Assembly (NCBI GenBank): GCA_002269645.1
Contig: NIVC01000297.1
Span: forward strand, 372,001-436,000
Source of the DNA: Macrostomum lignano
Taxonomy: Eukaryota
DNA: 64,000 nucleotides
Direction of reading: 5' to 3'
Numbering within the stretch: the first letter of the stretch is position 1; every line of letters starts with the position of its first letter. Under the pieces are notes generated by a model, which had not been told where the DNA came from, did not search any database, and was given only the letters and a program-made list of their open reading frames with translations. Positions 17,116 through 56,218 of the stretch are shown one piece after another. Both the position numbers and the translations under genes were made by a program.

Positions 17116-17139
17116 TTGATGCAGACTGTCTATGAATGC

Positions 17140-17232
17140 TTTTTTCCTGTGTCTGTTTGTCATAGTTTCCGCATTAGTATCTGCCAGTCTGTCTGCCCAC
17201 CTGCCTTGTGTGTGCCTGTCTGTCTGTCTTTG

Positions 17233-26181: not shown

Positions 26182-26429
26182 GTTTGTTTGTTTGCATGCA
26201 AATAAAAGAAGAAATGCTTTCATTAGTTTGAAGTGATGTTTCTTGGAAAAAATTCCTAAAAGCTTTGCGCAAAATACACTGGCTATAGAAATTCCTTTTC
26301 TTTCAGCAAAAATAGCACCACTTTCTATTTTCACTTTCAGGTATGACTTGCCTGTCTTATTGTCACTAAAACCTATTTTGCTAACCAATTACTAGCAATA
26401 GTAAAAATCGTGTGCATTTTTACCTGCAC

Positions 26430-27782: not shown

Positions 27783-28847
27783 CTACACTTCGGTACTTAA
27801 CATGATTTCATCAGAATCCAGTTGTAACTTTATGTTAGATGACTCATCGCCGCCATTCCTTTGAAGATCATTAGATGACAGCATGTTAGATGACTCATCA
27901 CCGCCATTCCTTTGATTATCATCAGACGGCATCAAGTTGTCTAGCTCATTCTTCGGCAACTCACTAGTGGAAGATGGAGTTCTCTTACGGTTGCCAGAGG
28001 AGCGCTGCAGGCTGTTGGTAGACAGACTTGAAGCCTGTTTCAGCTTCTGTTGAAATTTCTGCTTCTGTTTATTGTTCTTCCACCATTGATAGTAGAAGAC
28101 TAGGATAGCAATCAGGATGGCAGTGAGAAGGATCACTATTGGTACCATCAAACCAATCAGTATCTTTGCGTAGAGCGGAATGGCAGATTTATCGGCAGTG
28201 CCAGCAGATTTATCGGCAGTACCAGCAGATTTATCGGCAGTACCAGCAGATTTATCGGCAGTACCAGCAGATTTATCGGCAGTACCAGCAGATTTATCGG
28301 CAGTGCCAGCAGATTTATCGGCAGTTCCAGCAGATTTATCGGCAGTACCAGCAGATTTATCGGCAGTACCAGCAGATTTATCGGCAGTGCCAGCAGATTT
28401 ATCGGCAGTTCCAGCAGATTTATCGGCAGTACCAGCAGATTTATCGGCAGTTCCAGCAAATTTATCGGCAGTCTCAGCAGATTTATCGGCAGTACTAGCA
28501 GATTTATCAATACTACCAGATGGTTTCGCAGTACTACCAATAGGTTTATTAGCAGCGGCTTCAGCTGGTTCAACAGAGGCCTCGATGTTTCCAGCCATCC
28601 GCGGCTGCAGCTCATCCAAGGTGAACTTGCAGTATTTGCGGACAAAGGTCCGCCTGCACTCGTGCCTCACTGTGGGATTGCTGCGGCACCGGTCAAGAGT
28701 AGGACACAGTTTGCAGTCATGGGTGCTCATGTCAGGGTATCTGCCTGGCTCACATTTTGGAGGCCAATCGCCCATGGTTCTGGCCTCTGGGTTGATGGAA
28801 AACCACAACGGTACAATCACAGCCAGAGAAAGCAAACCTGCTTTCAT
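27783..28847 (-). CDS. R5: TNFR-like membrane protein, close paralog of R4
   Basis: MKAGLLSLAVIVPLWFS; CEPGRY..CKLCPTLDRC..; (GTADKSA)n stalk; TM; tail closely matches R4. Confidence 0.8.
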   Translation of the reverse strand: MKAGLLSLAVIVPLWFSINPEARTMGDWPPKCEPGRYPDMSTHDCKLCPTLDRCRSNPTVRHECRRTFVRKYCKFTLDELQPRMAGNIEASVEPAEAAANKPIGSTAKPSGSIDKSASTADKSAETADKFAGTADKSAGTADKSAGTADKSAGTADKSAGTADKSAGTADKSAGTADKSAGTADKSAGTADKSAGTADKSAGTADKSAGTADKSAGTADKSAIPLYAKILIGLMVPIVILLTAILIAILVFYYQWWKNNKQKQKFQQKLKQASSLSTNSLQRSSGNRKRTPSSTSELPKNELDNLMPSDDNQRNGGDESSNMLSSNDLQRNGGDESSNIKLQLDSDEIMLSTEV

Positions 28848-30716: not shown

Positions 30717-31486
30717 TTATTTGGATAGAGATTCTTTGTCAACACCATCGGTATCTGTGGGGCCAGCTGTCTGCTCGTCCTTCGTCAGTAACTGGCTGAA
30801 AGAATTTTCGCCTTTAATAAACTTGCATTGCTTGTCTGCACTGGATTCAACTGCAGGTCGAGCATTTTTGCACAGTTTGTAAATAACACACGATAGGACG
30901 GCAATAGCGATTAAGGAAATGAATAAAAGGACAGCTAAAACGATTGTCCAAGGATCTACTCTGCTATCCTGGCAGGCTGCACCATTCTTTGATCCTTCGG
31001 TGGTATTGGGTTGCAGAGATTCTGCAGAGCTAGAATTATTGCTCACAGCAACACCACCAATGTCCGAGCTGCTACCTGGCGCATTCTCAGCGAGATTTGG
31101 CGCTTCAGTCACTGATTTACCAATTAGTGATGAGGCGTTTCTTCTTCGCCAGGAATCTGATGGACAGTTGCACTTGCAATCACATGCGGCACCTGTATTC
31201 ACATCAGAGGCATTGCCTGGCAGCTTGGCGCTACTGTTGAAATTATGAGCTGATGAAGCCGTCTCAGCATCTCGAGACTGGTTCCAAAATTCCTGACAGC
31301 CAGCTCTAATAATCTCCTGCTCGCACTGAGCTCGCCAAAATTTATGTTCTCCGATGCACTGCTGCCATGTTGGGCATTTATCACAGTTGTCAGTAGCGCC
31401 CTTATTGTGATAGGTGCCCAGTGGGCAGTTTTTTGACGGCAGCCCGGCAGTGAGACATGGCATGCCTGAATTATTTTTAACGACAT
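30717..31486 (-). CDS. R6: TNFR-like membrane protein with a frameshifted signal peptide (possible pseudogene)
   Basis: CRD closely matches R2; stalk/TM/tail closely match R9. The ATG homologous to R2 (31486) is out of frame; an in-frame ATG lies at 31463. Confidence 0.6.
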
Positions 31487-31894
31487 CTTGATCTGTAGCA
31501 AGATTGGTGAAGTCACTGAAATTATATGTAGAATTGAATAGATTAGCAATCCATTCTATTCTGCTTTGTATCAAAGGGAATAGATTAGCAATCCACTCCA
31601 TCAAACGTTTTTATTATTGCTAAATCATGTGCTATATTTCTAAGCAATAAAACAAAAACAAATCGGACTTTATCGAGTTGGAAAGCTTAGTTATTTAAAA
31701 CAAAGGCACACAAACGCACGGATTGAAAAACAGGTTAAAATGAGTAATTATGTGTATCAAACTGTTGGTAAGAAGGACAACTGTCTAACTTCAGCTGGAT
31801 ATAGCAAGTAGTTAATCGATAGACTTTAAAAGTACTAAAGTAAGACAAAAATATGAATAAACGATTGAATGAGCTTTGGTGAAGGTCAGTAAGA

Positions 31895-33826: not shown

Positions 33827-34324
33827 TCAATTGCGAACATATTTATAAAGTTTGTGCAATAAAAACCCTGGCCCGATGATGGCAAGGATGGCGATGGCAA
33901 TCTGATATGGCAGAACATTTTCACAGTTGCAATCACATGCGACACCCGTAGTCATATCAGAGGCATCGCCAGCTAGTTTGGCGCTACTGTTGGAAGCCGT
34001 CCCAGCAGCTCGAGTGATGGCATTCATGCTTTGCAGAGACTCGCCCGCTTCTGCAGAGCCAGAATTACTGCTCACAGCAACATCACTGATGTCGGAGCTG
34101 CTACCTGACGACCAATAATCTGAGCAAGCGGACTTAATCAACGGCCTGTCGCACCTGGCTGCCCAGGCTCTGCCAAAGTCGCCGCGGCACTTCGATAAAC
34201 TTGGGCAGTCCTTGCAATTGCTGGCTCCCTCGCTGTCCCGATACTGGCCAGGGGGGCAGGCAGGCAGGGGAGCCGCCAGCATGGGCGACACCAGCGCCAA
34301 TGTTGTTGAAAGCGCCAGATGCAT
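33827..34324 (-). CDS. R7: TNFR-like membrane protein with a premature stop after the TM
   Basis: CRD nearly identical to R1; TM like R2; TGA at 33827-33829 where R2 has AGA, and an R2-like tail continues in frame past it. Confidence 0.7.
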   Translation of the reverse strand: MHLALSTTLALVSPMLAAPLPACPPGQYRDSEGASNCKDCPSLSKCRGDFGRAWAARCDRPLIKSACSDYWSSGSSSDISDVAVSSNSGSAEAGESLQSMNAITRAAGTASNSSAKLAGDASDMTTGVACDCNCENVLPYQIAIAILAIIGPGFLLHKLYKYVRN

Positions 34325-36107: not shown

Positions 36108-36470
36108 TCACTCGCAAAGATTGAGAGACTTTACACCTGCACTCTCAAAAGTGGCGACCACAGACGGAATCTTCTGTGATGGCGACTTTTCGATGTTGCT
36201 GAGTATACATCTTCGGAAAAAGGTCGTAGTCACAGGGACGATCATGTCAGGTGAGTACGGTGGGTGGGGCAGCTTTTGCCTGCCTCCTTGGGTAGGACCT
36301 AATTGCAACTCCTGCACAATCTTGCTGGTGAGGGGGCTGGCATTGTCGTGCAGAAGGAGAATGCCATCGTCAAGGATCTTTTGGCGCTTTTGAGCAGTGC
36401 AGGGCGAAGATGCTGGATGATGAAGCACCTGTAGTAGTGTTAGTTGACAGTCAGGCCATCAGGCACATAG
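36108..36470 (-). mobile_element. Degenerate Tc1/mariner transposase fragment
   Basis: ILLLHDNASP and LPHPPYSPD match the mariner HDNARPH and PHPPYSPDL motifs; degenerate and partial. Confidence 0.8.
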
Positions 36471-36662: not shown

Positions 36663-38002
36663 TTAATTGCACGAACTTTTAGAATGACCATTAGCGGTTT
36701 TTGATGCTGAAATGTTTTTAAACATAACAAACAGGAATAAAACGCCAGCGATCGTCCAAGAAATAGATCTTTTTATCAATGCAGCTCCATCATTTTTTTG
36801 AGTCGTAACTTCATTTTTCCAAAAATCTGCGCAAGCAGACTTAATGGAAGCCCTGTCACACCTGGCTTCCCAGGCTTTGCAAGAGTCGCCGCGGCGGGTC
36901 GCCATCATAAGCGCGCACCGGCACAAGCGCGCCTGTGTATTTTATGTCAAAGTCTGGCACAGGCGCGCAGAGACATAAGCGCGCACGTTTTGACTTGCAC
37001 AAGAGCGCGGTAGAAAGTGCTCAGCATTGGCATAAGCGCGCACCATCACAAGACCGCACTGACATAAGCGCGCTGTCAGAGTTTGGCACAAGCGCGCACT
37101 TCTGGCTTTGTGTTGCAAAAGCGCGCAGTCAAGTTGCTCCATCGTCTGTCACAAAGTAGTCGATTGTATTTGTACGAATGAAATCGAATTGAAATCCTTT
37201 CGACCAGAAGATATTAGGCACGGTTCTGAATGTAGCCTGACTCAGACGACTCAGCATGTCAGGGTGAGCAAAGATGAGTCCATGGCCGTCATCAGCAGAT
37301 GATACACCACCCTGAATAATGATGACACTGTTGACACACCTGAAGCGGTCTGGAGCATCGCATATTGCTGCATACGCGTCGACAGCTGCTTTTGGAAGAG
37401 GTGGCAGCAGGCGTCTTCTTTGTCGATACATCGACGACTCCACTTCAGCAAATCCAATCCGATTGCCGACGGAGCTTGCCTGTGTCTCTCGGTCGAACAG
37501 ATCACGAAGGAATGAACTGCTCTCACCGGCCTTCCGCTTCAAATTGGCTCATAGCCGAAGTATTTCCTTCTCCTTTGAATCACCGTCGTGGTTGTGCGCG
37601 ATGAGTCTCAGCACACCATCCTTCTCGACGGCGCGTCCCGGACAGTTCTTGTTAGTGCAGCGATAGCTGACTGTCCCATTTCTAACTCTATCTTTCCGAT
37701 AAATGCAGACGCCGTGCGTATAGACTACTGAGCCGATTCTTTCCCCTTCGATTGGCTCCATTGTGTTTCAAACACTCCAACTGCGACTGAGACAGAGGTT
37801 GTCTTATTTATCTAAGTCGCAGTATCTATCGACAGTGTACATGCTTACAATTGTGCTGGCATTGGCACTGCGCTGGACTGGGGCAATTCTTGCAATCCAT
37901 AGCGCCCTCTTTGTCGCGGTAGTGGCCAGGCGGACAGGCAGGCAGTGGACCTGCCAGCCTCGGCAGCACCAGCGCCAGTGTGACTAATATTGCCAACCGC
38001 AT
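36663..38002 (-). pseudogene. R8: TNFR-like paralog split by a roughly 970-bp insertion
   Basis: 5' part MRLAILVTLALVLPRLAGPLPACPPGHYRDKEGAMDCKNCP (38002 to about 37864); 3' part RGDSCKAWEARCDRASIKSACADFW..TM (36895-36663). Confidence 0.75.
36896..37863 (-). mobile_element. Truncated Mutator-like (MULE) element with a FLYWCH-type transposase N-terminus
   Basis: YRC-x4-C..HNH Zn finger (37761-37549); in-frame TGA; then LPPLP and LIFA..TFRTVP..F motifs; repeated AAGCGCGC subterminal motifs at 36908-37130. Confidence 0.7.
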
Positions 38003-39825: not shown

Positions 39826-40632
39826 TTAGCTGGATTGAGATTCTTCGCCATCAATAAAGACAGCGGAATCATCGGCATCTGTATGGGCAGCTGTCTGCTC
39901 GTCCTTGGTCAGCAACTGGCTTACACAACTTTCGCCTTTATTAAACTTGCATTGCCTGTCTGCACTGGATTTAACTGCAGTGCGAGCATTTTTGCACTGT
40001 TTGTAAATAACACAGGATAGGACGATCACGCAGACCAATAAAAGTACAGCTAAAACCCAGACGATTGGCCAAGGATCTACTTTGTCAGCCGCATCATTAT
40101 TTGATCCTTCAGTGGTGGTATTAGGTTGCAGAGATTCTTTACAGCTAGACTTATTGTTCACAGCAACACCACTGATGTCGGAGCCGCTACGTGACGCATT
40201 CTCAGCGAGATTTGGCGCCTCAGTCACTGATTTACCAATTAGTGATGATGTGTTGCTTCTTGGCCAGGAATCTGAGGGACAGTTGCAGTTACACGCGACA
40301 CCAGTGTTCACATGAGATGCATTGCCAGGCTGCTTGGCGCTACTGTTGGAATTATGAGATGATGAAGCCGTCTCAGCATCTCGCGAGCCAGCCAAAGTGG
40401 AACAGTTGGGAAGACGACACACGCCTCGATTCCAGAGTTGTTGGCACTTCCAGCCCCAAAATTTCTCCATCAATCGGTGCGCTTGACTGCAGTCGAAGCA
40501 CACGCGTGGACAGTGACTATTCTGTTTAGCGTTGTTGTTCCAGTACGTAGGAACAGTCGGCACTCGGGCTTGGCAGAAGGCGACCAACTGTGCAGCGACA
40601 ATGCATTCATATGCGTAGCTTATGATACGCAT
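39826..40632 (-). CDS. R9: membrane protein with a divergent Cys domain on an R6-type stalk/TM/tail
   Basis: Signal-like N-terminus; C-x3-C-x2-C-x14-C-x8-C-x4-C; SRDAETASS...DPWPIVWVL... closely matches R6. Confidence 0.75.
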   Translation of the reverse strand: MRIISYAYECIVAAQLVAFCQARVPTVPTYWNNNAKQNSHCPRVCFDCSQAHRLMEKFWGWKCQQLWNRGVCRLPNCSTLAGSRDAETASSSHNSNSSAKQPGNASHVNTGVACNCNCPSDSWPRSNTSSLIGKSVTEAPNLAENASRSGSDISGVAVNNKSSCKESLQPNTTTEGSNNDAADKVDPWPIVWVLAVLLLVCVIVLSCVIYKQCKNARTAVKSSADRQCKFNKGESCVSQLLTKDEQTAAHTDADDSAVFIDGEESQSS

Positions 40633-42187: not shown

Positions 42188-42904
42188 CTGTTAATTTAAC
42201 GGGAGCGTTATTAGTAATAATTTTTTTAAGTCTCTAGGCGCTTTAATCTCTAACAGAAACACTGGATGAAGACAGTAAATTTAGCTTGTAATTGCTACTC
42301 TTACCATCAATTGGCACAACGCCCTTCTCAATTTATAACTTGAATAAATTGGATATCAAATTAATTGAAAAATACCAAATAGGTTCTAACCTGTATTGCA
42401 TCTTCTAAACATGTGACCATGATGCTGAAAAAAATGCTTAACTCCGTACACAAAAGCCGGTAGCATGAAGCAGACACAAACAATTAGCGACATCCACGAT
42501 GTTAAACAATCATAAGCAGACTTATGATTAGTACTATACATTTTCATTAGTTCACGAAGAGAAAGAATCGCTGGAGTCACTTCTGGACAGGAGCTAGTAA
42601 GTATAAGCTACAGATCGAGGGGTGATAAAATTGAGAAATTAACATAAGACAAGTAAAATATTCTATTATTTTTCTACTATCTTTTTGTACTTTTGTTTTT
42701 TGTACTATCAAATTCTAGACTAGGTTATACCAGTTCGTACAAGGTCACAGCGGATCAATGCAAATTTCGCTGTTGCTCGGTGGGTCGCTAATCGGGTCTG
42801 AAATAAAGTGGGAATGCGAGCTTATACGATAAAAATTTTTCTTGACGTACATGTAGTCTGTGTTTTGTTCGGTACACCTTAACTAATGGATGCATACATA
42901 TTAA

Positions 42905-42960
42905 CAGATAGTCAGACAGACAAGTAAAGGAGACAGACAGGCAGACAGACAGGCAGGTAA

Positions 42961-43019
<59 letters not shown>

Positions 43020-43194
43020 GGCAGACAGACAGGCAGAAAGGCAGACAGACAGACAGACAGGCAGACAGACAGACAGACAGACAGACAGGCAGACAGGCAG
43101 ACAGACAGGCAGACAGACAGACAGACAGACAGGCAGACAGGCAGACAGACAGACAGACAGACAGACAGGCAGGCAGGCAGACAGACAGACAGGC

Positions 43195-43231
<37 letters not shown>

Positions 43232-43446
43232 GGCAGGTAAACAGACAGACAGACAGACAGGCAGGCAGACAGACAGACAGACAGACAGACAGGCAGACAG
43301 GCAGACAGGCAGACAGACAGGCAGACAGACAGGCAGAAAGGCAGACAGACAGACAGACAGGCAGACAGACAGACAGACAGACAGGCAGACAGGCAGACAG
43401 ACAGACAGACAGACAGACAGGCAGGCAGGCAGACAGACAGACAGGC

Positions 43447-43483
<37 letters not shown>

Positions 43484-43570
43484 GGCAGGTAAACAGACAG
43501 ACAGACAGACAGGCAGGCAGACAGACAGACAGACAGACAGACAGGCAGGCAGGCAGACAGACAGACAGGC

Positions 43571-43607
<37 letters not shown>

Positions 43608-43806
43608 GGCAGGTAAACAGACAGACAGACAGACAGGCAGACAGACAGACAGAAAGACAAACAGGCAGGCAGGCAGGCAGACAGACAGGCAGGCAGACAG
43701 ACAGACAGACAGGCAGGCAGGCAGGCAGACAGACAGACAGACAGACAGGCAGGCAGACAGACAGACAGACAGACAGACAGGCAGGCAGGCAGACAGACAG
43801 ACAGGC

Positions 43807-43839
<33 letters not shown>

Positions 43840-43938
43840 GGCAGGCAGACAGACAGACAGACAGACAGACAGGCAGGCAGACAGGCAGACAGACAGACAG
43901 ACAGACAGACAGGCAGGCAAGCAGACAGACAGACAGGC

Positions 43939-43975
<37 letters not shown>

Positions 43976-44010
43976 GGCAGGTAAACAGACAGACAGACAG
44001 ACAGGCAGGC

Positions 44011-44051
<41 letters not shown>

Positions 44052-44206
44052 GGCAGGCAGACAGACAGACAGACAGACAGACAGGCAGGCAGGCAGACAG
44101 ACAGACAGGCAGACAGGCAGACAGGCAGACAGACAGACAGACAGACAGGCAGGTAAACAGACAGACAGACAGACAGGCAGACAGACAGACAGAAAGACAG
44201 ACCGGC

Positions 44207-44243
<37 letters not shown>

Positions 44244-44270
44244 GGCAGGCAGGCAGACAGACAGACAGGC

Positions 44271-44307
<37 letters not shown>

Positions 44308-44647
44308 GGCAGGTAAACAGACAGACAGACAGACAGGCAGACAGACAGACAGAAAGACAAACAGGCAGGCAGGCAGGCAGACAGACAGGCAGGCAGACAG
44401 ACAGACAGACAGGCAGGCAGGCAGGCAGACAGACAGACAGGCAGGCAGACAGGCAGGCAGACAGACAGACAAACAGGCAGGCAGGCAGGCAGACAGACAG
44501 GCAGGCAGACAGACAGACAGGCAGACAGACAGACAGACAGACAGGCAGGCAGGCAGACAGACAGACAGGCAGACAGACAGACAGGCAGACAGACAAACAG
44601 GCAGGCAGGCAGACAGACAGGCAGGCAGACAGACAAACAGGCAGGCA

Positions 44648-44720
<73 letters not shown>

Positions 44721-44803
44721 ACAGGCAGGCAGACAGGCAGACAGACAGACAGGCAGACAGACAGACAGACAGACAGACAGGCAGGCAGACAAACAGGCAG
44801 GCA

Positions 44804-44880
<77 letters not shown>

Positions 44881-44922
44881 ACAGGCAGGCAGACAGGCAG
44901 ACAGACAGACAGGCAGACAGAC

Positions 44923-44978
<56 letters not shown>
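42905..44978. repeat. 2.1-kb (GACA/GGCA)n microsatellite
   Basis: Direct reading; opposite orientation to the receptor-linked TCTG tracts. Confidence 0.97.
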
Positions 44979-44979
<1 letters not shown>

Positions 44980-45728
44980 TGCAGCCATCGAACCAGTCTC
45001 ACCAGTCATCTCAGCCTCAGCTCGCACCAGATCCATCAAATCGCCATCCTGATGCAGCAGGGTGCCATCAGAACCCGTAGCGTTGGACGGCAGCTCCACA
45101 GTTGGCTGAGAGCCGCCGGCAGCTGGATCTTCATCATTGGTAGTATCGGTGTCATTCGAGTCGTAATCATAGTCCACTAATCTGACAGCAGACGAGGAGG
45201 AGGAGGTCTCTTTTGGTGTCACCTCGTGAAAGGCTTCGGCGTGATCCAACAGCCAGGTGAACAATTCGCCGCGTTGCTTCGCCGGCAACTTGCAGTAGTT
45301 GATGAGGCGTCGATACAGACTCCCAACAGTGAGTCCCAGTCGTCTGCAGTCAGCTTGAAACTGCTGCAACCTGTGCTGGAAATCTGTGTCGCCAAAAGTG
45401 AAATAGACACAGGAGCGGCCAGTCACAGCGCAGGCCATCAGCTGGATTAGCGACTTCAATTGTAGATCGCCACCGAATGCGCCGCAACCCCAGTTGCCCG
45501 TGGCAACGGGACGACGCTTGGATTTATGTTTAACATTGGCCGGACCGCCAAATCCTACCAGAGCTTTGTGCAGCTCTCTGTCGATAGCGGATTTATTAAA
45601 CTGTTGTTTGTAGCCTGCGGCACCGCGACTGTAGCATCTGGCGTCAATGGCAACCAGCTTGGTTACCAGGCGACGGTTGGTGTCGCGAGGCCGAGTATCG
45701 GTGTGATCTCCGTTCCATTGGAATGTGC
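44979..45728 (-). CDS. PARG: PARG exon 5 (3' boundary uncertain)
   Basis: aacag acceptor; VAIDA..RELHKALVGF..ATGNWGCGAFGGD..KSLIQLMA..YFTFGD; candidate donors at 44994 or 44979. Confidence 0.85.
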
Positions 45729-45749
45729 CTGTTGGTTGGGATGGAGAGA

Positions 45750-45958
45750 AAGGAGACATGAGATGAGAGATGAGATAGGAGAGATGAGATAGGAGAGATG
45801 AGATAGGAGAGATGAGATAGGAGAGATGAGATAGGAGTGATGAGATAGAAGAGATGAGATAGGATAGGAGAGAGAGATAGTGTATAGGAGATGAGATAGG
45901 AAAGACGAGATAGGAGAGATGAGATAGGAGAGTCGATATAGGCGAGACGAGAGAGAAG
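45750..45958. repeat. (GAGAT)n-like simple repeat in PARG intron 4
   Basis: Direct reading. Confidence 0.9.
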
Positions 45959-46539: not shown

Positions 46540-47003
46540 AGGAGGATCTGGGAGACTGGCCCAGCAACTGAGGATCTGGGAGGCTGGCCCAGCAACTGGG
46601 GATCTGGGAGGCTGGCCCAGCAACTAAGGATCTGGGAGGCTGGCCCAGCAACTGTGGATCTAGGAGGCTGGCCCAGCAACTGGGGATCTGAGAGGCTGGC
46701 CCAGCAACTGTGGATCTGGGAGGCTGGCCTAGCAACTGTGGATCTGGGAGGCTGGCCCAGCAACTGGGGATCTGGGAGGCTGGCCCAGCAACTGTGGATC
46801 TGAGAGGCTGGCCCAGCAACTGGGGATCTGAGAGGCTGGCCCAGCAACTGGGGATCTGAGAGGCTGGCCCAGCAACTGGGGATCTGGGAGGCTGGCCCAG
46901 CAACTGGGGATCTAGGAGGCTGGCCCAGCAACTGTGGATCTAGGAGGCTGGCCCAACAACTGGGGATCTAGGAGGCTGGCCCAGCAACTGGGGATCTGAG
47001 AGG
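46540..47003. repeat. 28-bp minisatellite filling PARG intron 3
   Basis: (tggcccagcaactggggatctgggaggc)n. Confidence 0.95.
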
Positions 47004-47037
47004 CCTCACTCTGCATTACCAAAAAACCCGAGCGCAC

Positions 47038-47231
47038 CTGCACCAGGCCGCGCCCCAGCACCCCGCCCCCGATGTAGGCGTTGGCGAAGTCCACCTCCAG
47101 CATGCCGGCGCCGTCATCCTCGATGGTGCCCTCTGCGGCCGCCAGCAGATCAGGCAGCAGTTCAGTTCGAGCTGACCAGTCTATGCGTTCGTTTATCACT
47201 CGACGACTAAACGTGACAACGCCCAGAGGAT
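47038..47231 (-). CDS. PARG: PARG exon 3
   Basis: EGTIED..LEVDFANAYIGGGVLGRGLVQ|gtgcgc; PARG GGG-x6-QEE signature. Confidence 0.92.
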
Positions 47232-47516
47232 CTGCGAGAGTTGTACGCTTTAACAATTATGATTGGAACAAAATTTAATCAGTCAGTCAGTCAGAAAGAC
47301 ACACATCAAAACCAGGCAGAATTTAGCTGACTTCACTTTTGTCCACTGTCTTCTACAGAACTCTCAATAATCTGTTAAACTGTCAACCGCACTCAGCCGA
47401 GTGCGCAGGAGAGGTTATATTATAGCCTGCTTTTGGGAGAGTCTATTAAAACTTTAAGCAATTCCAATTCTTCTATCACGGAACAAAGCAATTTTATTAT
47501 CGGTAACCGAAAAGAG

Positions 47517-47707
47517 ATGGATTTTACTAGCAAAGCTGTTCTGCTACTGGTAGGATTCGTTCTAATTCTAAACAGCCAAATTGAAAGCGTCCAAAGTGTA
47601 CCAGCTGGTCAATTTTTGAGCAAGTCAATCATGTTTCGCAGTCCGGCTGAACTCAAGCAGTACCTGAGAACTTTGAACGCATTCTATGCCACTCTGGGAC
47701 GGCCCAG
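47517..47707 (+). CDS. npf: NPF/NPY-family neuropeptide precursor, exon 1
   Basis: Signal MDFTSKAVLLLVGFVLILNS..; ELKQYLRTLNAFYATLGRP AG|gtaatt; phase-2 intron inside the Arg codon, as is typical of NPY/NPF genes. Confidence 0.88.
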
Positions 47708-47833
47708 GTAATTTAAATTCGTTTATATTCTTGATGAAGTTCACACCCGACCCGCGATTCACCACACATCGAAAGTGAAATGTGGAGCGCTTGTACATAT
47801 TTTTATACAAGAATTATTTATTCAATATTTCAG

Positions 47834-47864
47834 ATACCGCAAGAGATTTCACTTCGAAGCCTGA
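47834..47864 (+). CDS. npf: NPF/NPY-family precursor, exon 2
   Basis: tttcag|A TAC CGC AAG AGA TTT CAC TTC GAA GCC TGA gives GRPRY-RKR-FHFEA*. Confidence 0.8.
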
Positions 47865-48034
47865 GTCAAACTGACCGACTGACTGGGAGCAATCTTGAAC
47901 AGACCAACAGTAAAAACTAATAAAAACTATAGAAGCTGGATATGCAAAGTATAATCGGCAATCAGAAAAAAACAAATAAAAATGGTTTTATTAAGCTGCT
48001 TGCTTTTTTCAATATTTATTAACTTTGTAAGTCA

Positions 48035-48285
48035 GGGGTTGTAACCTTGTGGCTAGAGAGTCGAACTCACGACTTTAAGGTCGGGGGTTCGATTCCTGAT
48101 CTTATTTGGAACAATTTGTGTCCTTGAGCAAGACACTTAACTCTGCATTGCTTCAGTTCACCCAGCTGTAAAATGGGTGCCAGCATTAGCTGGGGTAATT
48201 GAGGGTGTGTGTGGCGACCCCCCCCCCCTTAAGTCTTTGGACTGAACAGCCGTACGCAGCCTTCAGATGCGCCGCGCAATAGCTG
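48035..48285 (+). mobile_element. tRNA-derived CORE-type SINE, copy B (inverted relative to A)
   Basis: B-box ggttcgattcc at about 48084; gtgtccttgagcaagacacttaactc..cagttcacccagctgtaaaatggg. Confidence 0.75.
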
Positions 48286-48379
48286 GCCCATTAGGGCAGG
48301 TGCAATCAATTATGATTATCATTAGCAGTCGAAAAAATTAATCCCTAACCAAACAAAATGTTGATAATGAATTAATTAC

Positions 48380-48477
48380 CTTTAGTAGTAACTCTTTGGA
48401 AATAGTTGAACAAGCATTTCAGCTTTTCAATTCGACGGGGGCAACCTGCACCGGCTTGACCTCCGGATGAGAACAGG
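48380..48477 (-). CDS. PARG: PARG exon 2
   Basis: tttcag|..LFSSGGQAGAGCPRRIEKLKCLFNYFQRVTTK G|gtaatt; phase 2/1. Confidence 0.85.
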
Positions 48478-48649
48478 CTGAAAATTAGTAGTACATCAGA
48501 AGGTGCTAATTTATCGTAAACTGACAGAATGCTTTACATAATCCACTTCCATCTTATAACTCTCGAATGGTAAAATATCTACTCTTAACACTAAACCTTA
48601 AGGTTTGTGAGGGATTTCAAACCCTCAGTCGCTAACCCTAACCCTAATC

Positions 48650-49142
48650 CTTCGCCCCAGTCCCTAATCCTTCACCCTCAGTCTCTAATCCTTCACCCTC
48701 AGTCTCTAATCCTTCACCCTCAGTCTCTAATCATTCACCCTCAGTCTCTAATCCTTCACCCTCAGTCTCTAATCCTTCACCCTCAGTCCCTAATCCTTCA
48801 CCCTCAGTCTCTAATCCTTCACTCTCAGTCCCTAATCCTTAACTCTCAGTCTCTAATCCTTTACTCTCAGTCTCTAATCCTTCACTCTCAGTCTCTAATC
48901 CTTCACCCTCAATCCCTAATCCTTCACCCTCAGTCTCTAATCCTTCACCCTCAATCCCTAATCCTTCACCCTCAGTCTCTAATCCTTCACCCACCCTCAG
49001 TCCCTAATCCTTCACTCTCAGTCCCTAATCCTTCACCCTCAGTCTCTAATCCTTCACCCTCAGTCTCTAATCCTTCACCCTCAGTCTCTAATCATTCACC
49101 CTCAGTCCCTAATCCTTCACCCTCAGTCTCTAATCCTTCACC
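48650..49142. repeat. 21-bp minisatellite in PARG intron 1
   Basis: (aatccttcaccctcagtctct)n. Confidence 0.95.
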
Positions 49143-49179
49143 CAAAAAAGTAAACAAAAGCCAATATACTCCAACTCAC

Positions 49180-50186
49180 GTGCTAAAATGTATGGTAGGG
49201 AAGTTGGCGTATTCCCTGTTAGCAAAGCTTCGCCTAGGAAATGTGCTAAAAAATGCGTTAGCCAATAAGCTGGCCACCTGTAGCTGACTGAGCGTCACCT
49301 TGAGCTGATAGCCGCACCTCAGCAGAGGCGGAGGCGTAGTAACCAGATGCGGCAGAGCCAAGGCCAGCCTCACCATACCAGGCAAGACACGGTTGAGAAA
49401 GTGCCGCATCTCTCCCCTACCCAACTCCTCAGTTAGCAGACAATTGAGACTATCCAAGCACAAGCTAGACTGCCTACGCCCGCTGCACACGTTCAACACA
49501 GTGGCCAAATCGTCTATACCAATGGATCTTGCTGACTTGAGTTGATTCAAACTGTGCTCAATAGCCGACCATCGACTGGCATTACGGGGAGAGCAGGGCA
49601 TTCTAACATGGCCGGAGTCCCATCTGTCAGAGAACTCAGTTGGCCAAGGCTGTGGCGGCTGGCTGGATCTTGCCTGCTCGTAGAAATTGTCGATTCTAAA
49701 TAGTACAGAGTGTCCTGCTCTAGGAGGGCAGCTGAAGGGCAGCCGGGCAAGATTCGGCTCAGGCCTCAAAGCCTCGAGCTGGCGACGCCAGTCGCGACAA
49801 CTGGATGTCGAGGCGACCGTCGATGAGCTGACGGCTCCGCCAGTAAGAAAATGCTGCAACCGCTGCGACTCCTCGTCATTGTCGTCGGTTTCTGTTTCTT
49901 CTGCTTCTTCCTCCGCAATCGGCTCTGTAGCGGAGCTTGTAACACTGTCGTCTGTTGGGACTCTCTTGACCTGGCTCTGCTGCTGTTCTGGATCTGCTGA
50001 AGCAACAGGATCAGTGTCCGATCGATTCAGCGAAGCCGGCGGTGGATTGCTAGACTCGCCAGCTTTTCTCGGGCTCCGACGCGTCGGTGGCGTTTGCTGA
50101 GAAGCCCGATGCTTGCGTTTTGTTGCTGCTTCTAGGGGAGACACGTCGGGTTGCTCCGGCTCTTGCTGAATCTTCCTACGCTTCAT
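49180..50186 (-). CDS. PARG: Poly(ADP-ribose) glycohydrolase, exon 1
   Basis: MKRRKIQ (NLS-like) and a disordered N-terminus; WDSGHVRMPCS, LPHLVTTPPPLL, QVASLLANAFFSTFP; donor AGCAC|gtgagt. Confidence 0.9.
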
Positions 50187-51880: not shown

Positions 51881-52309
51881 TCAGTGCAGCCACTGCCTAT
51901 AATGTTCTGGCACCGCCGTTAGCAAATTTTTCGATTCCAAAAACTTTCTACTAAATAATTTAGCGTAGTAGCGCTGGCCTAGGTCGCACAGGCAGGTGAC
52001 AATTACGTGACCAGGCCCCATCTGGCGGGCGGCCTGCACGGCGCCGGCTACGTTAATGCCGGACGAGGCGCCAACAAAGAAGCCCTCCTCGTGCAGCAGG
52101 CGAAACGTGTGCTCAACCGCCATTGCGTCGGTTATGTGCAGCGCGTGATCCACAGGTGCGCCAGACAGGTTCTGCGTCACCCGGCCCTGCCCGATGCCCT
52201 CAGTGATGGAGCCGTCGCCTTGGCGTTTCAACTCGCCATTGGTGAAATAGTTGTACAGTACGCTGCCCTCAGGGTCCAGCAGGAAGGTGCGCACGTCCGG
52301 GTTGCGCTC
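51881..52309 (-). CDS. cysK: Cysteine synthase (CysK/OAS-sulfhydrylase family), exon 3
   Basis: cag|ERNPDV..SITEGIGQGRVT..EEGFFVGASSGINVAGA..GPGHVIVTCLCDLGQRY..WLH*. Confidence 0.9.
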   Translation of the reverse strand, partial: ERNPDVRTFLLDPEGSVLYNYFTNGELKRQGDGSITEGIGQGRVTQNLSGAPVDHALHITDAMAVEHTFRLLHEEGFFVGASSGINVAGAVQAARQMGPGHVIVTCLCDLGQRYYAKLFSRKFLESKNLLTAVPEHYRQWLH

Positions 52310-52374
52310 CTGGGGGTTCCGGGGGATGAAGATAACAATTTCAATTATTCTCTGTATCACCCTCTCTCTTGTTC

Positions 52375-53030
52375 TATGTATCTCCCTCTCCCCCAGTCTG
52401 TATCACCTTCTTCCCTGTTCTCTGTATCTCCCTCTTCCCTGTTCTCTGTATCTCCCTCTCCCCCAGTCTATATCTCCCTCTCCCCCGGTCTGTGTCTTCC
52501 TTTCCTCCGGTCTGTATCTCCCTCTCCCCAGTCCGTATCGCCCTCTCCCTCGGTCTGTATCTTCCTCTCCCTCTCTCCGGTCCGGTCTGTATCTCCCTCT
52601 CCTGTCTGTATCTCCCTCTCTCCTGGTCTGTATCTCCCTCTCCTCCAGTCTGTATCTCCCTCTCCTCCAGTCCGTATCGCCCTCTCCCTCGGTCTGTATC
52701 TTCCTCTCCCTTACTCTCTGTATCTCCCTCTCCCCGGTCCGGTCTGTATCTCCCTCTCCAGTCTGTATCTCCCTCTTCCTCGGTCTGTATCTCCCTCTCA
52801 TCTGGTCTGTATCTCCCTCTTCCTCGGTTTGTATCTCCCTCTCTGTCTGTATCTCCCTCTCCACAGTCCGTATCGCCCTCTCCCTCGGTCTGTATCTTCC
52901 TCTCCCTCGGTCTGTATCTTCCTCTCCCTTACTCTCTGTATCTCCCTCTCCCCGGTCCGGTCTGTATCTTCCTCTTCCTCGGTCTGTATCTCCCTCTCCC
53001 CTGTCTGTATCCCCTCTCCTATCTGTATAC
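52375..53030. repeat. CT-rich compound repeat in cysteine synthase intron 2
   Basis: (ctgtatctccctctcc) variants. Confidence 0.92.
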
Positions 53031-53327
53031 ACACCAAGCCTTATTCTATTACTCTCAATCCCGTAATGAACGTGTCATCTGGCACTACCTGTAGTCTTTA
53101 TCTATTTTTTATTCAACTGCTTATAAAAACTGTCTGCAAGCTCCTCTAGACCCAAAAAGGGGACACTATAGCTACTCTTATCTTAACCGCTCGGGCTAAG
53201 CAATTTATTAGAGAAAATTCACACCTGTACCAGCCCTTACCCTGAAACTGAAATAACTAGGTCGGCTTATCTAATAAAGATAGGTTAACAGTTTTAGCTA
53301 GCCAACATGTATAACAATATGCCCTAC

Positions 53328-53448
53328 CTTGAGAAAAGTGCCAACACCGGCCAGTGTACCCCCGGTGCCGGTGGCGAAGGCCACAGCGTCAACCCGGCCC
53401 TCGGTCTCCTCCCAGATCTCCGGGCCAGTGGTTTCGTAGTGGGCCAGC
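53328..53448 (-). CDS. cysK: Cysteine synthase, exon 2
   Basis: cgcag|[41 protein letters not shown]|gtaggg; TTGPEIW and GTGGT motifs. Confidence 0.9.
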
Positions 53449-53699
53449 CTGCGCAGAAATTGAGCATAGCGTACTTAGTTGGGTGTTTGGGTAGCTATAT
53501 AGTGAGTAGTTCAAGTACTCGTATATCCAGATTGTAAACCAATATTATATGATTCCTATATGGATCTCTACCTCTTGAGAGTCTTAACCAGACGTAAGAA
53601 TCTCACTCCTTAGTCTGGAATAAAGATTTCATGATAATCTCACCCTTAATTCTAATTAAGCTTAAACCCTAATGAGAATCTAATCTTTAATTCTAATAA

Positions 53700-53970
53700 C
53701 CCTTAAATCCCCACGAGAATCTCAACGCTTAGAGCCTTATCGTCATGAGAATCTCAACACTTAGAGCCTCGTCTTCATGAGAATCTCACCGCTTAGAGCC
53801 TCCTCGACCTCATGAGAATCTCACCACTTAGAGCCTCCTCACTCTCCTGAGAATCTCCCCGCCTAGAGCCTCCTCGACCTCATGAGAATCTCACCACTTA
53901 GAGCCTCCTCACTCTCCTGAGAATCTCACCGCTTAAAGCCTCCTCACCCTTATGAGAATCTCAGCACTGA
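53700..53970. repeat. Degenerate tandem repeat of about 35 bp
   Basis: catgagaatctcaccgcttagagcctcctc.. Confidence 0.85.
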
Positions 53971-54462
53971 AAGTTTCACCTAAAGTCTCAAATTCAAGAA
54001 CTAAAGATAGGCATGCGCAGCGCCCTTTAAGTCTTATATATATATTTCTAATAATAAATTTTTACTCATGATACGCTCCTATCTCGTAAACCAAGCCAAT
54101 AACCCAAGGGTGCCTGTTGGACTTTAATCACACTTTAACTTAAGTTCAACCGAACAAACGCACAACTAACGTTTCAAGAAAGCAAAAAATTCTGCCTGTG
54201 ATAAGGCACAACTGTAAAAATACACTATACTATATAATTGATAACAGATTCTCAACAGTTGGAAAAATGATTGCATGAGACTAGTCTAAGAGCCCAACAC
54301 GCAGTGGTAGAGTGCTATGATTAAAAAGTAGCGAACAAATATGATGTACACGCTAACATGTACATGTATGCACAATGCACATAACTGCCCCGACTCGTAG
54401 TTACAAGGTGTATCAGACGCTTTGCTCAGACGGAGCAAAACTAACAGCAATTCTAAATTGAT

Positions 54463-55612
54463 CTGTGATCTGGCATCTCATTCCCCGTGTTTTGTAACTT
54501 CCTGATCTCCTCAGTAGCTTCCGAGATCTGCGATCTGGCATCTCATTCCCCGTGTTCTGTAACTTCCGGATCTCCTCAGTAGCTTCCGAGATCTGCGATC
54601 TGGCATCTCATTCCCTATGTTTTGTAACTTCCGGATCTCCTCAGTAGCATCCGGGATCTGTGATCTGGCATCTCATTCCCCGTGTTCTGTAACTTCCGGA
54701 TCTCCTCAGTAGCTTCCGAGATCTGCGATCTGGCATCTCATTCCCTATGTTTTGTAACTTCCGGATCTCCTCAGTAGCTTCCGAGATCTGCGATCTGGTA
54801 TCTCATTCCCTATGTTTTGTAACTTCCGGATCTCCTCAGTAGCTTCCGGGATCTGCGATCTGGCATCTCATTCCCTATGTTTTGTAACTTCCGGATCTCC
54901 TCAGTAGCATCCGGGATCTGTGATCTGGCATCTCATTCCCCGTGTTCTGTAACTTCCGGATCTCCTCAGTAGCTTCCGAGATCTGCGATCTGGTATCTCA
55001 TTCCCTGTGTTGTGTAACTTCCGGATCTCCTCAGTAGCTTCCGAGATCTGCGATCTGGTATCTCATTCCCTATGTTTTGTAACTTCCGGATCTCCTCAGT
55101 AGCTTCCGGGATCTGTGATCTGGCATCTCATTCCCTGTGTTTTGTGACTTCCGGATCTCTTCAGCAGCTTCCCGGATCTGCGATATGGCATCTCATTCCC
55201 TGTGTTGTGTAACTTCCGGATCTCCTCAGTAGCTTCCTGGATCTGTGATCTGGCATCTCATTCCCTGTGTTTTGTAACTTCCGGATCTCCTCAGTAGCAT
55301 CCGGGATCTGTGATCTGGCATCTCATTCCCTGTGTTTTGTAACTTCCGGATCTCCTCAGTAGCATCCGGGATCTGCGATCTGGCATCTCATTCCCTGTCT
55401 TTTGTAACTTCCGGATCTCCTCAGTAGCATCCGGGATCTGTGATCTGGCATCTCATTCCCTGTGTTTTGTTACTTCTGGATCTCTTCAGTAGCTTCCCGG
55501 ATCTGCGATCTGGAATCTATTTCCCTGTGTTTTGTGACTTCCGGATCTCCCCAGTAGCATCCGGGATCTGCGATCTGGCATCTCATTCCCTGTGTTTTGT
55601 AACTTCCAGGTC
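54463..55612. repeat. 65-bp minisatellite in cysteine synthase intron 1
   Basis: gatctgcgatctggcatctcattccctgtgttttgtaacttccggatctcctcagtagcatccgg. Confidence 0.95.
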
Positions 55613-55742
55613 CCAGTATTATCTAAGAATTCCTCCCGTTGACTGTGTCTGGATAAAGAACTGGTTAGCTAGCCCACATATGGCTACACAACGTATGTCC
55701 ACGAGTTGGATCTGCAAATACTTATCACGCATATGGTCTCAC

Positions 55743-56218
55743 CTATTAGCGGTATTATCAAACTGATTAGTCCACACGGAGTTCTCCAATTCTTCGGCAA
55801 ATCGTTTCGCTTGATGATTATAATTGTTAGGATCGGTGTAGGCAACGGCCGGTACGGGATACACTGTGGCGCTTAATACTCTTAACAAGTCGATTTTCTC
55901 TTTAGACTGAGTTTCAGGCATAAATATGACGCATTTATACCCAAGCGCGTTGCACAGGTGAGCCAAACCGATACCGGTATTACCGGCGGTGCCTTCAACC
56001 ACGGTGCCGCCAGGTTTCAATTGGCCGCGCTTCACCGCATCGGCAATCAGGTACAAAGCGGCCCGGTCTTTCACCGAGCCGCCAGCGTTGGCGTACTCGG
56101 CTTTGGCAAGGATTTCGCAGCCGGTAGCTTCGCTAACCCGACCCAATCTGATCATAGGCGTGCGCCCTACAGCGCCGCGAAGGCCCTGACGAATCAGACT
56201 GTTAGCCAGAGTGGACAT
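55743..56218 (-). CDS. cysK: Cysteine synthase, exon 1
   Basis: [22 protein letters not shown] (PLP lysine), [19 protein letters not shown]; donor AATAG|gtgaga. Spliced CDS is 1026 nt = 341 aa. Confidence 0.92.

What the first reader, a model, noticed from the sequence alone, without database searches (positions are those of the whole stretch)
47517..47864. NPF/NPY neuropeptide gene nested antisense in PARG intron 2, lacking the amidation glycine
Seen: a two-exon plus-strand gene gives a signal peptide and a roughly 38-aa peptide ending GRPRY, then RKR. The intron falls in phase 2 of the penultimate Arg codon. Knowledge: that intron position and the GRPRF/Y end are NPY/NPF hallmarks, and these peptides are normally followed by G-K-R, with Gly as the amide donor. 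Here the codon is CGC (Arg), not GGC. Inference: either a non-amidated or differently processed NPF, or a single-base variant or error. The ORF track misses the spliced end.
Basis: partly seen in the sequence, partly recalled or inferred. Interest (0 to 1): 0.75.

Follow-up and report, generated by a model that had tools for sequence, protein, structure and literature searches.

The report
Flatworm neuropeptide F gene without amidation glycine
An unannotated neuropeptide F/Y gene of the flatworm Macrostomum lignano sits antisense in an intron of PARG and, in all three genome copies, has arginine where every known relative has the glycine needed for the C-terminal amide, so it probably makes a non-amidated hormone.

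Summary
The plus strand carries a two-exon gene (47517-47707 and 47834-47864) with a 126-nt GT..AG intron in phase 2 of an Arg codon. It encodes a 73-aa prepropeptide: a signal peptide, a 38-aa peptide ending GRPRY, then RKR-FHFEA. It passes Pfam's threshold for the NPY/pancreatic-hormone family. It lies antisense in intron 2 of PARG.

The window is Macrostomum lignano, assembly Mlig_3_7, contig NIVC01000297.1. The gene is not annotated there.

I fetched the two other subgenome copies of the locus. Both also read TAC-CGC-AAG-AGR (Y-R-K-R), although they differ from the window at nearby bases and by intron and UTR indels. The Arg codon is therefore not a sequencing error or a private variant.

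No alternative acceptor restores G-K-R in any copy. The peptide core has 4 synonymous and 0 non-synonymous changes. The coding sequence has no indels, against 16 in the surrounding intron. This suggests constraint.

All 11 planarian NPY-family precursors carry the glycine. So do all nine repeats of M. lignano's second, intronless, three-peptide NPF gene.

The most likely product is a free-acid NPF. Expression and bioactivity are untested.

The parts
47416..47424 (+). TATA-like element (TATATTATA) about 95 nt upstream of the ATG; a candidate core promoter
   Evidence: Read directly from the sequence. The 116 nt before the ATG differ by only 0.9-1.7% between the three copies. One copy has TATATTACA. 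A promoter role is inferred, not shown.
47517..47597 (+). Signal peptide, 27 codons (MDFTSKAVLLLVGFVLILNSQIESVQS)
   Evidence: The hydrophobic core AVLLLVGFVLIL has a mean Kyte-Doolittle value of 3.4. It is modelled as a helix over residues 3-25. Val at -3 and Ser at -1 fit the cleavage rule. The cleavage site is a heuristic; no SignalP run was possible.
47598..47707 (+). Exon 1 part of the mature peptide (VPAGQ...TLGRP plus the first two bases of Arg64)
   Evidence: Pfam Hormone_3 matches residues 40-65.
47708..47833 (+). Intron of 126 nt, GT..AG, phase 2 inside the Arg codon that precedes the terminal Tyr
   Evidence: The splice sites are kept in all three copies while the intron body has 21-nt and 31-36-nt indels. 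Vertebrate and planarian npy genes have an intron at the same position (PMC2953531).
47834..47837 (+). Third base of Arg64 and the Tyr65 codon (TAC), the last residue of the predicted peptide
47838..47840 (+). CGC, Arg66, at the position where relatives have the Gly amide donor
   Evidence: The codon is invariant in all three subgenome copies. It aligns with Gly of the planarian precursors NPY-1, -2, -4, -5, -6, -8, -9 and -11 and of Mlig009822; the NPY-3 alignment is gapped at this position.
47841..47846 (+). Lys67-Arg68 dibasic prohormone-convertase site; together with Arg66 it forms RKR
   Evidence: AGA in the window versus AGG in the other two copies is a synonymous change.
47847..47864 (+). 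C-terminal pentapeptide FHFEA and the TGA stop
   Evidence: Identical in all three copies.
47919..47924 (+). AATAAA polyadenylation signal, 55 nt after the stop codon
   Evidence: Read from the sequence. The other two copies also have AATAAA in the 3' UTR despite indels around it.
47071..47253 (-). PARG exon 3, one flank of the host intron (approximate ends)
   Evidence: tblastn of the annotated PARG model P0261 on the window.
48381..48479 (-). PARG exon 2, the other flank of the host intron (approximate ends)
   Evidence: tblastn of P0261 on the window.

Best explanation

Shown:
- It keeps the ancestral family gene structure: the signal peptide and nearly the whole peptide are in one exon, and a phase-2 intron sits in the Arg codon before the last aromatic residue.
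- It is nested antisense in intron 2 of PARG.
- The codon after the terminal Tyr is Arg (CGC), not Gly, in all three subgenome copies.
- The reading frame, the splice sites and the peptide core are conserved between the copies, while neighbouring non-coding DNA has diverged.

Inferred:
- The prepropeptide enters the secretory pathway and loses a 27-aa signal peptide.
- A prohormone convertase cuts after the tribasic RKR.
- A carboxypeptidase E-type enzyme trims the basic residues.
- Peptidylglycine alpha-amidating monooxygenase needs a C-terminal Gly, so the 38-aa product VPAGQFLSKSIMFRSPAELKQYLRTLNAFYATLGRPRY ends in a free carboxylate (average mass about 4392 Da). A pentapeptide, FHFEA, is released as well.
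- Amidated NPF in this animal is probably supplied by a second, intronless gene, Mlig009822, which encodes three tandem NPFs that each end SRPRF-GKR.
- That would have freed the ancestral-structure gene to lose amidation, either with a changed receptor relationship or with lower potency.
For: - Family: Pfam Hormone_3 at E 2.3e-9, above the cut-off. A library-wide HMMER search finds NPFs of krill, decapods, molluscs and M. lignano as the best relatives.
- Core sequence: FRSPAELKQYLRTLNAFYATLGRPR matches the bilaterian NPF consensus. The predicted helix over residues 43-59 is followed by a flexible tail.
- Species and copies: the window is NIVC01000297.1 of GCA_002269645.1. The homologous loci are on NIVC01000040.1 and NIVC01000298.1.
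- All three copies read Y-R-K-R, with a copy-specific synonymous difference 6 nt away.
- Constraint from substitutions: codons 35-73 have 0 non-synonymous and 4 synonymous changes, P about 0.002 under neutrality. The a-priori Pfam region 40-65 has 0 versus 3, P about 0.01.
- Constraint from indels: 0 events in 222 nt of coding sequence against 16 in 905 nt of surrounding intron, P(0) about 0.02.
- No alternative acceptor gives G-K/R within 8 kb downstream in any copy.
- The glycine is otherwise universal. It is present in all spliced homologues found, in 11 of 11 Schmidtea NPY-family precursors and in 9 of 9 Mlig009822 repeats.
- Mlig009822g1 is a contiguous 414-nt coding sequence without the family intron.
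Against: - There is no evidence of transcription. None of the three loci has a called gene here. Neither the spliced nor the unspliced product is in the 15-billion-protein collection.
- The three copies are young. Paralogue SNP divergence is about 2% genome-wide (PMC10733133), so the selection tests rest on ten substitutions. The split at codon 34/35 was chosen after seeing the data.
- Over the whole coding sequence pN/pS is about 0.4-0.6, which is not significantly below 1.
- Coding-sequence substitution divergence (2.6-4.2%) is no lower than that of the flanking intron.
- From general knowledge of vertebrate NPY, the free acid is essentially inactive at Y receptors. Loss of the Gly could therefore equally mean loss of function.
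- No outgroup species could be examined.
Confidence: 0.6

Rival explanations
1. The gene is a young pseudogene. It lost its function when the amidation Gly mutated to Arg before the subgenomes separated. The three copies look intact only because too little time has passed for disabling mutations to accumulate.
For: - No transcript or gene model exists at any of the three loci.
- Whole-gene pN/pS is not clearly below 1, and the N-terminal 34 codons carry 6 non-synonymous and 0 synonymous changes.
- Substitution divergence in the coding sequence is not lower than in the flanking intron.
- A canonical amidated NPF gene exists elsewhere in the genome and could make this one redundant.
Against: - The core has 0 non-synonymous versus 4 synonymous changes.
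- There are no indels in the coding sequence, where about 3.9 would be expected from the flanking rate.
- The start codon, both splice sites, the stop codon, the TATA-like element and AATAAA are kept in all three copies.
Confidence: 0.25
2. The precursor is not cut at RKR, or the cut peptide is not an NPF-receptor ligand at all. The gene has been re-used for another secreted, strongly basic peptide. Bovine seminalplasmin (PYY2) is a precedent: a duplicated NPY-family gene that became a non-amidated seminal peptide.
For: - The predicted peptide is very basic (pI 10.5) with an amphipathic helix.
- RYRKRFHFEA is identical in all three copies.
- Seminalplasmin is listed as PYY2 in the cattle prohormone survey (PMC2698874). 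Its non-amidated nature is from general knowledge.
Against: - KR preceded by R is a strong convertase site.
- The NPF-like core, including RPRY, is exactly the part that shows only synonymous change, as expected if receptor-type recognition still matters.
- No functional data exist either way.
Confidence: 0.1
3. CGC is a sequencing, polishing or assembly error, or a private variant of one haplotype. The true codon is GGC.
For: One transversion separates CGC from GGC. In this neopolyploid, 93% of read pairs map to several loci (PMC10733133), so polishing could in principle homogenise the copies.
Against: Three separate contigs all have CGC. They keep copy-specific differences 6 nt downstream (AGA/AGG) and elsewhere in the exon, so the copies were not homogenised here.
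Confidence: 0.03
4. A different 3' exon or acceptor is used in vivo and restores Y/F-G-K-R.
For: One search shows a second AG at 47844-47845, so that an alternative exon would start at 47846. It would give ...GRPR-FHFEA, without Gly or a cleavage site.
Against: - No AG followed by N-T[AT]Y-GGN-basic exists within 8 kb downstream in any of the three copies.
- No [YF]G[KR][KR] is found in any plus frame of 47000-49200.
- The used acceptor has the best pyrimidine/AT tract and is followed by a stop codon and AATAAA.
Confidence: 0.02

Closest known systems
Flatworm NPY-superfamily genes (Schmidtea mediterranea npy-1 to npy-11; NPF of Moniezia, Arthurdendyus and Schistosoma)
   Same: - A signal peptide is followed directly by a peptide of about 36-40 aa.
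- The core reads ...P.EL..YL..LN.Y.AI.GRPR[FY].
- An intron sits in the Arg codon before the last residue (PMC2953531).
- The C-terminal flanking peptide is short, as in Smed npy-1 and npy-3.
- The best planarian alignments are to NPY-1 and NPY-5, at 15-17 identities over 35 residues.
- A terminal Tyr also occurs in Smed NPY-5, -7, -9 and -10.
   Different: All 11 planarian precursors have Gly after the terminal residue (GKR, or a C-terminal G). This gene has Arg. Amidated ends were detected by mass spectrometry for planarian family members. None can form here.
Macrostomum lignano Mlig009822 (g1-g3), annotated Neuropeptide F
   Same: Same species and same family (PF00159 hit). It shares the FRSPAE...YL..LN.Y...RPR core, with 14 of 29 residues identical. 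It is likewise present in three subgenome copies.
   Different: It is intronless and encodes three tandem NPFs per precursor, each ending SRPRF-GKR. The window gene has one peptide, the ancestral intron, a terminal Tyr and no Gly.
Arthropod and mollusc long NPF (the krill Meganyctiphanes three-copy NPF is the best hit, E 7e-17)
   Same: The sequence core is shared, with 44% identity to the krill protein. The peptide length class is the same.
   Different: Each of these has G-K-R or G-R after RPRF.
Bovine seminalplasmin / PYY2 (general knowledge; named as PYY2 in PMC2698874)
   Same: It is a duplicated NPY-family gene whose product is secreted without the C-terminal amide and has left classical Y-receptor signalling. 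This is a precedent for re-use of the family scaffold.
   Different: It is a vertebrate gene whose C-terminus arose by a larger change than one codon. No sequence relationship to the flatworm gene is implied, and I did not test it here.

Membership tests
NPY/NPF (pancreatic hormone, Pfam PF00159) | Sequence match to the family profile above the curated threshold | tested here: met
   E 2.3e-9 and 37.6 bits against a cut-off of 28.7, over residues 40-65. The best library hits are NPFs.
NPY/NPF (pancreatic hormone, Pfam PF00159) | Secretory precursor with the peptide directly after the signal peptide; peptide length about 36-40 aa | tested here: met
   There is a hydrophobic N-terminal helix with a plausible VQS|V cleavage site, and the predicted peptide is 38 aa. 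The cleavage site was predicted heuristically only.
NPY/NPF (pancreatic hormone, Pfam PF00159) | C-terminal R-x-R-[FY] motif | tested here: met
   The peptide ends ...GRPRY, identically in all three copies.
NPY/NPF (pancreatic hormone, Pfam PF00159) | Intron inside the Arg codon that precedes the terminal aromatic residue | tested here: met
   AG|gt...ag|A, phase 2. The splice sites are kept in all three copies. The feature is described for vertebrate and planarian npy genes in PMC2953531.
NPY/NPF (pancreatic hormone, Pfam PF00159) | Gly amide donor after the terminal residue, giving the RxR[FY]-amide end that defines the mature peptides | tested here: not met
   CGC (Arg) is present in all three copies. 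No alternative exon supplies Gly. Gly is present in all compared relatives.
NPY/NPF (pancreatic hormone, Pfam PF00159) | Basic convertase cleavage site after the peptide | tested here: met
   R-K-R follows directly after Tyr65.
NPY/NPF (pancreatic hormone, Pfam PF00159) | C-terminal amphipathic alpha-helix followed by a flexible receptor-binding tail | tested here: met
   The single-sequence AlphaFold model has a helix over residues 43-59 at pLDDT of about 72-74, with a coil tail. Model confidence is moderate.
NPY/NPF (pancreatic hormone, Pfam PF00159) | Expression in neurons or endocrine cells and activation of an NPY/NPF-type GPCR | not testable with these tools
   No transcript-derived product is in the collection. 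No receptor data are available.

The most novel reading that the evidence does not exclude
The ancestral-structure NPF gene of Macrostomum lignano makes a bioactive free-acid peptide (…RPRY-OH) that is kept by selection and signals without the C-terminal amide. It would do so through a co-evolved NPF/NPY-type receptor or a different one. This would be a naturally non-amidated neuropeptide of the NPY/NPF family, a family for which the amide is treated as a defining and functionally essential feature.
Probability: 0.3. Interest if true: 0.7.

Novelty: new variant of a known kind. Interest (0 to 1): 0.5.

Why it matters
The C-terminal amide is treated as part of the definition of NPY/NPF peptides (RxRF/Y-amide) and as necessary for receptor activation.

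This gene keeps every other family hallmark, including the ancient intron. It has fixed the loss of the amide donor in all three subgenomes, and its core shows a pattern of purifying selection. That makes it a natural experiment on whether the amide is dispensable and on how ligand and receptor co-evolve after gene duplication. M. lignano is a tractable model with RNAi and transgenesis, so the question can be tested.

There are practical consequences too:
- The gene is missing from the M. lignano annotations.
- Part of its first exon is buried in a chimeric UniProt model.
- Neuropeptide-mining pipelines that require G-[KR]-[KR] would miss genes of this kind.

If the gene proves to be unexpressed, it is instead a clean example of how a single codon change retires a hormone gene after duplication.

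Tried and rejected
- The word-indexed protein search with the 73-aa precursor found nothing. This was uninformative, because it even missed a protein that shares 23 identical residues.
- Full-text search for the peptide strings found no paper.
- My first PARG search missed the M. lignano PARG. A chimeric query made of lineage-specific ORFs retrieved it.
- McVeigh et al. 2009, the flatworm neuropeptide survey that included M. lignano ESTs, is not held. I could not obtain Koziol et al. 2016 either (a mis-formed query). I therefore cannot exclude that this precursor was listed there.
- Literature searches for Macrostomum NPF/NPY or for non-amidated NPF found no report of it.
- The metagenome scan for close relatives found none.
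- Exact look-up of the spliced and unspliced products of all three copies found none, so there is no transcript evidence.
- Rfam and ARAGORN found nothing in the window.
- I considered and rejected a sequencing error and an alternative acceptor. I also looked for a second NPF exon in the window and found none.
- My first translation used a start coordinate one base off. This was corrected.

Full report
**1. What is in the sequence**

- The ATG is at 47517, in a good context (A at -3, G at +4).
- Exon 1 coding sequence ends at 47707, with donor CCCAG|GTAATT.
- The intron is 126 nt and ends at 47833, with acceptor TATTTCAG|A.
- Exon 2 coding sequence is 47834-47864.
- The intron splits an Arg codon as AG|A, which is phase 2.

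The 73-aa product is MDFTSKAVLLLVGFVLILNSQIESVQS-VPAGQFLSKSIMFRSPAELKQYLRTLNAFYATLGRPRY-RKR-FHFEA. Codon 47838-47840 is CGC. A TATA-like element lies at 47416-47424 and an AATAAA at 47919-47924, so they bracket a compact transcription unit. Those two roles are inferred from the sequence.

**2. Is it more than chance, and what family is it**

- Pfam Hormone_3 (the pancreatic hormone/NPY family) matches residues 40-65 at E 2.3e-9 and 37.6 bits, above the curated cut-off of 28.7.
- An exhaustive HMMER search of 1.84 billion representative proteins returned 14 hits at E <= 0.001. Apart from one chimeric gene model and one long protein that matches only the signal-peptide region and was not examined, they are NPFs or NPF-like precursors. 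The named ones are krill NPFs and an M. lignano NPF; by my reading of the sequences the rest look like decapod and mollusc NPFs and unspliced NPF exons from environmental contigs.
- The core FRSPAELKQYLRTLNAFYATLGRPR fits the bilaterian NPF consensus closely.
- A single-sequence AlphaFold model gives a signal-peptide helix over residues 3-25, and a helix over residues 43-59 followed by a coil tail. This is the family's helix-plus-tail layout. Confidence is moderate.
- Only one such exon exists in the window.

**3. Context and species**

The minus strand encodes PARG. One of the HMMER hits, UniProt A0A1I8FTJ1 of Macrostomum lignano, is a chimeric model stitched from plus-strand ORFs of this very window, including part of NPF exon 1. 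That identified the species.

A query made of lineage-specific ORFs from the window retrieved the annotated M. lignano PARG. Cluster look-up and contig look-ups then showed three copies of the whole cysteine-synthase-PARG neighbourhood in assembly GCA_002269645.1 (Mlig_3_7):
- NIVC01000297.1, which is the window itself at 100% identity;
- NIVC01000040.1;
- NIVC01000298.1.

This fits the published finding that about 70% of that assembly is present as three paralogous subgenome copies with about 2% SNP divergence (PMC10733133; PMC5704211).

Mapping the 792-aa PARG model onto the window gives exons at 50186-49179, 48479-48381, 47253-47071, 46483-46343 and 45726-45022, plus 3' pieces. No gene is called at this position in any of the three loci.

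**4. Is the missing glycine real**

The alignment of the three copies shows TAC CGC AAG AG(A/G) in all of them, which reads Y-R-K-R.

The copies are clearly distinct.
- They differ by 21-nt and 31-36-nt indels in the intron and by a 30-nt indel in the 3' UTR.
- They differ by nine variable codons in the coding sequence, one of them only 6 nt from the CGC (AGA versus AGG).

Homogenisation by polishing is therefore unlikely, and a sequencing error or private variant is effectively excluded.

No alternative acceptor in the window or in either other copy gives [YF]-G-basic within 8 kb downstream. The only other in-phase AG, which would start the exon at 47846, would give ...GRPRFHFEA.

**5. Is the gene under constraint**

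Across the three copies:
- Codons 1-34, covering the signal peptide and the peptide's N-terminus, carry 6 non-synonymous nucleotide changes (D2K, S20N, Q32K, F33V, L34S) and no synonymous ones.
- Codons 35-73 (SKSIMFRSPAELKQYLRTLNAFYATLGRPRYRKRFHFEA) carry 4 synonymous changes and no non-synonymous ones.

With 22% synonymous sites, four out of four synonymous has P of about 0.002. Using the a-priori Pfam region 40-65 instead gives three out of three, P of about 0.01.

The coding sequence has no indel. The 905 nt of surrounding PARG-intron sequence has 16 indel events, so 3.9 would be expected in 222 nt, P(0) of about 0.02.

Three caveats apply. The numbers are small. The codon 34/35 split was chosen after seeing the data. 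Overall coding-sequence substitution divergence (2.6-4.2%) is not lower than that of the flanking intron. I read this as suggestive, not conclusive, evidence that the peptide core, including RPRY-RKR, is maintained by selection.

**6. Comparison with relatives**

- Every properly spliced homologue found has Gly after the terminal aromatic residue.
- The supplement of Collins et al. 2010 gives the Schmidtea mediterranea NPY-family precursors. NPY-1 to -6, -8, -10 and -11 have G-K-R. NPY-7 ends in G. NPY-9 has G-K-R after an irregular end.
- In pairwise alignments Arg66 of the window gene falls on that Gly in eight of the nine planarian precursors aligned and in Mlig009822; the NPY-3 alignment is gapped there.
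- M. lignano's other NPF gene, Mlig009822 (three subgenome copies), encodes three tandem NPFs, each ending SRPRF-GKR. It is a contiguous, intronless coding sequence.

The window gene is therefore the one that keeps the ancestral gene structure, and it is the one that lacks the amide donor.

**7. Mechanism**

Shown:
- The gene structure.
- The Arg codon in all three copies.
- The conservation pattern between the copies.

Inferred from established prohormone biochemistry:
- The signal peptide is removed.
- A convertase cleaves after RKR.
- A carboxypeptidase trims the basic residues.
- No amidation occurs, because the amidating enzyme needs a C-terminal Gly.

The predicted products are a 38-aa peptide ending Tyr-OH (average mass about 4392 Da, pI 10.5) and FHFEA.

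Whether this peptide still acts on an NPF/NPY-type receptor, acts elsewhere, or is inert cannot be decided here. From general knowledge, NPY free acid is nearly inactive at vertebrate Y receptors. The rivals are therefore a young pseudogene (about 0.25) and re-use as a different secreted basic peptide (about 0.1), for which bovine seminalplasmin/PYY2 is a precedent (and general knowledge).

**8. Novelty and verdict**

Homology places the gene in the NPY/NPF family, but it fails one defining feature of the mature peptides, the amide. I rate it a new variant of a known kind.

I found no report of it. Two relevant flatworm neuropeptide surveys could not be read, and no expression evidence exists.

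Interest is moderate at 0.5. The genomic fact is now solid and mildly surprising to a neuropeptide specialist. M. lignano allows direct tests. The functional claim is still open.

Noticed in passing
window 16609-17163, 19921-20496, 23186-23647, 25294-26388, 27783-28847, 30717-31604, 33827-34324, 36663-36926, 39826-40632 (all minus strand): A tandem array of at least nine paralogous single-exon ORFs. Each has a signal peptide, a shared Cys-rich motif (CP.G.Y...C..CP....C...W.A.C), a variable Ser/Ala-rich repeat region and one transmembrane helix. Only a weak Ephrin_rec_like hit was found, and there are no homologues outside Macrostomum among the hits seen.
   Followed up: partly
window 42904-44979; also about 17.1-18.2 kb, 23.6-24.7 kb, 31.8-32.8 kb and 34.3-34.7 kb: Very long (ACAG)n microsatellites; the largest has 519 copies over 2.1 kb. 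That one lies inside the PARG gene, between the catalytic exon and the annotated last exons. They create long spurious 'CLSVCLSV' ORFs in several frames.
   Followed up: partly
window 46544-47004 and 48644-49143: A 28-bp minisatellite (16.5 copies) lies in PARG intron 3, and a 21-bp minisatellite (23.7 copies) lies in PARG intron 1. BLAST offsets suggest that copy number differs between the three subgenome copies.
   Followed up: partly
window about 48036-48200: A tRNA-like SINE fragment (GGGGTTCGATTCC box followed by a conserved core) sits just downstream of the NPF poly(A) signal. ARAGORN and Rfam give no hit. Part of this region is a 50-nt indel between copies.
   Followed up: partly
window 45526-45792, 47640-47707, 49687-50100, 52007-52230 (plus strand pieces): UniProt A0A1I8FTJ1 (M. 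lignano, 336 aa) is a chimeric model. It is assembled from plus-strand ORFs antisense to PARG and to the cysteine-synthase gene, plus part of NPF exon 1. A0A1I8FTI8 fuses PALP and PARG domains. The annotated PARG models of the three copies also differ in length (792, 734 and 539 aa), mostly at their ends.
   Followed up: partly
window 51881-56218 (minus strand): This is a cysteine synthase (PALP, CysK-like) gene, annotated as Cysteine synthase 1 in M. lignano. Its best matches outside Macrostomum are fungal and rotifer proteins at 65-73% identity over the first exon. That is an unusual enzyme and an unusual similarity pattern for an animal.
   Followed up: no
L004 5001-5414 (NIVC01001537.1): This is the intronless M. 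lignano NPF gene Mlig009822g1. It encodes three tandem NPF peptides, each ending SRPRF-GKR. The best overall hit, from krill, also has three tandem NPFs. Multi-copy NPF precursors seem to have arisen more than once.
   Followed up: partly
window 37549-37761 and 36108-36428 (minus strand): An ORF with a FLYWCH zinc-finger domain (E 5e-5) lies next to an ORF with a DDE-transposase-like motif (…HDNASP…). They are probably remnants of a mobile element inside the membrane-protein gene array.
   Followed up: partly
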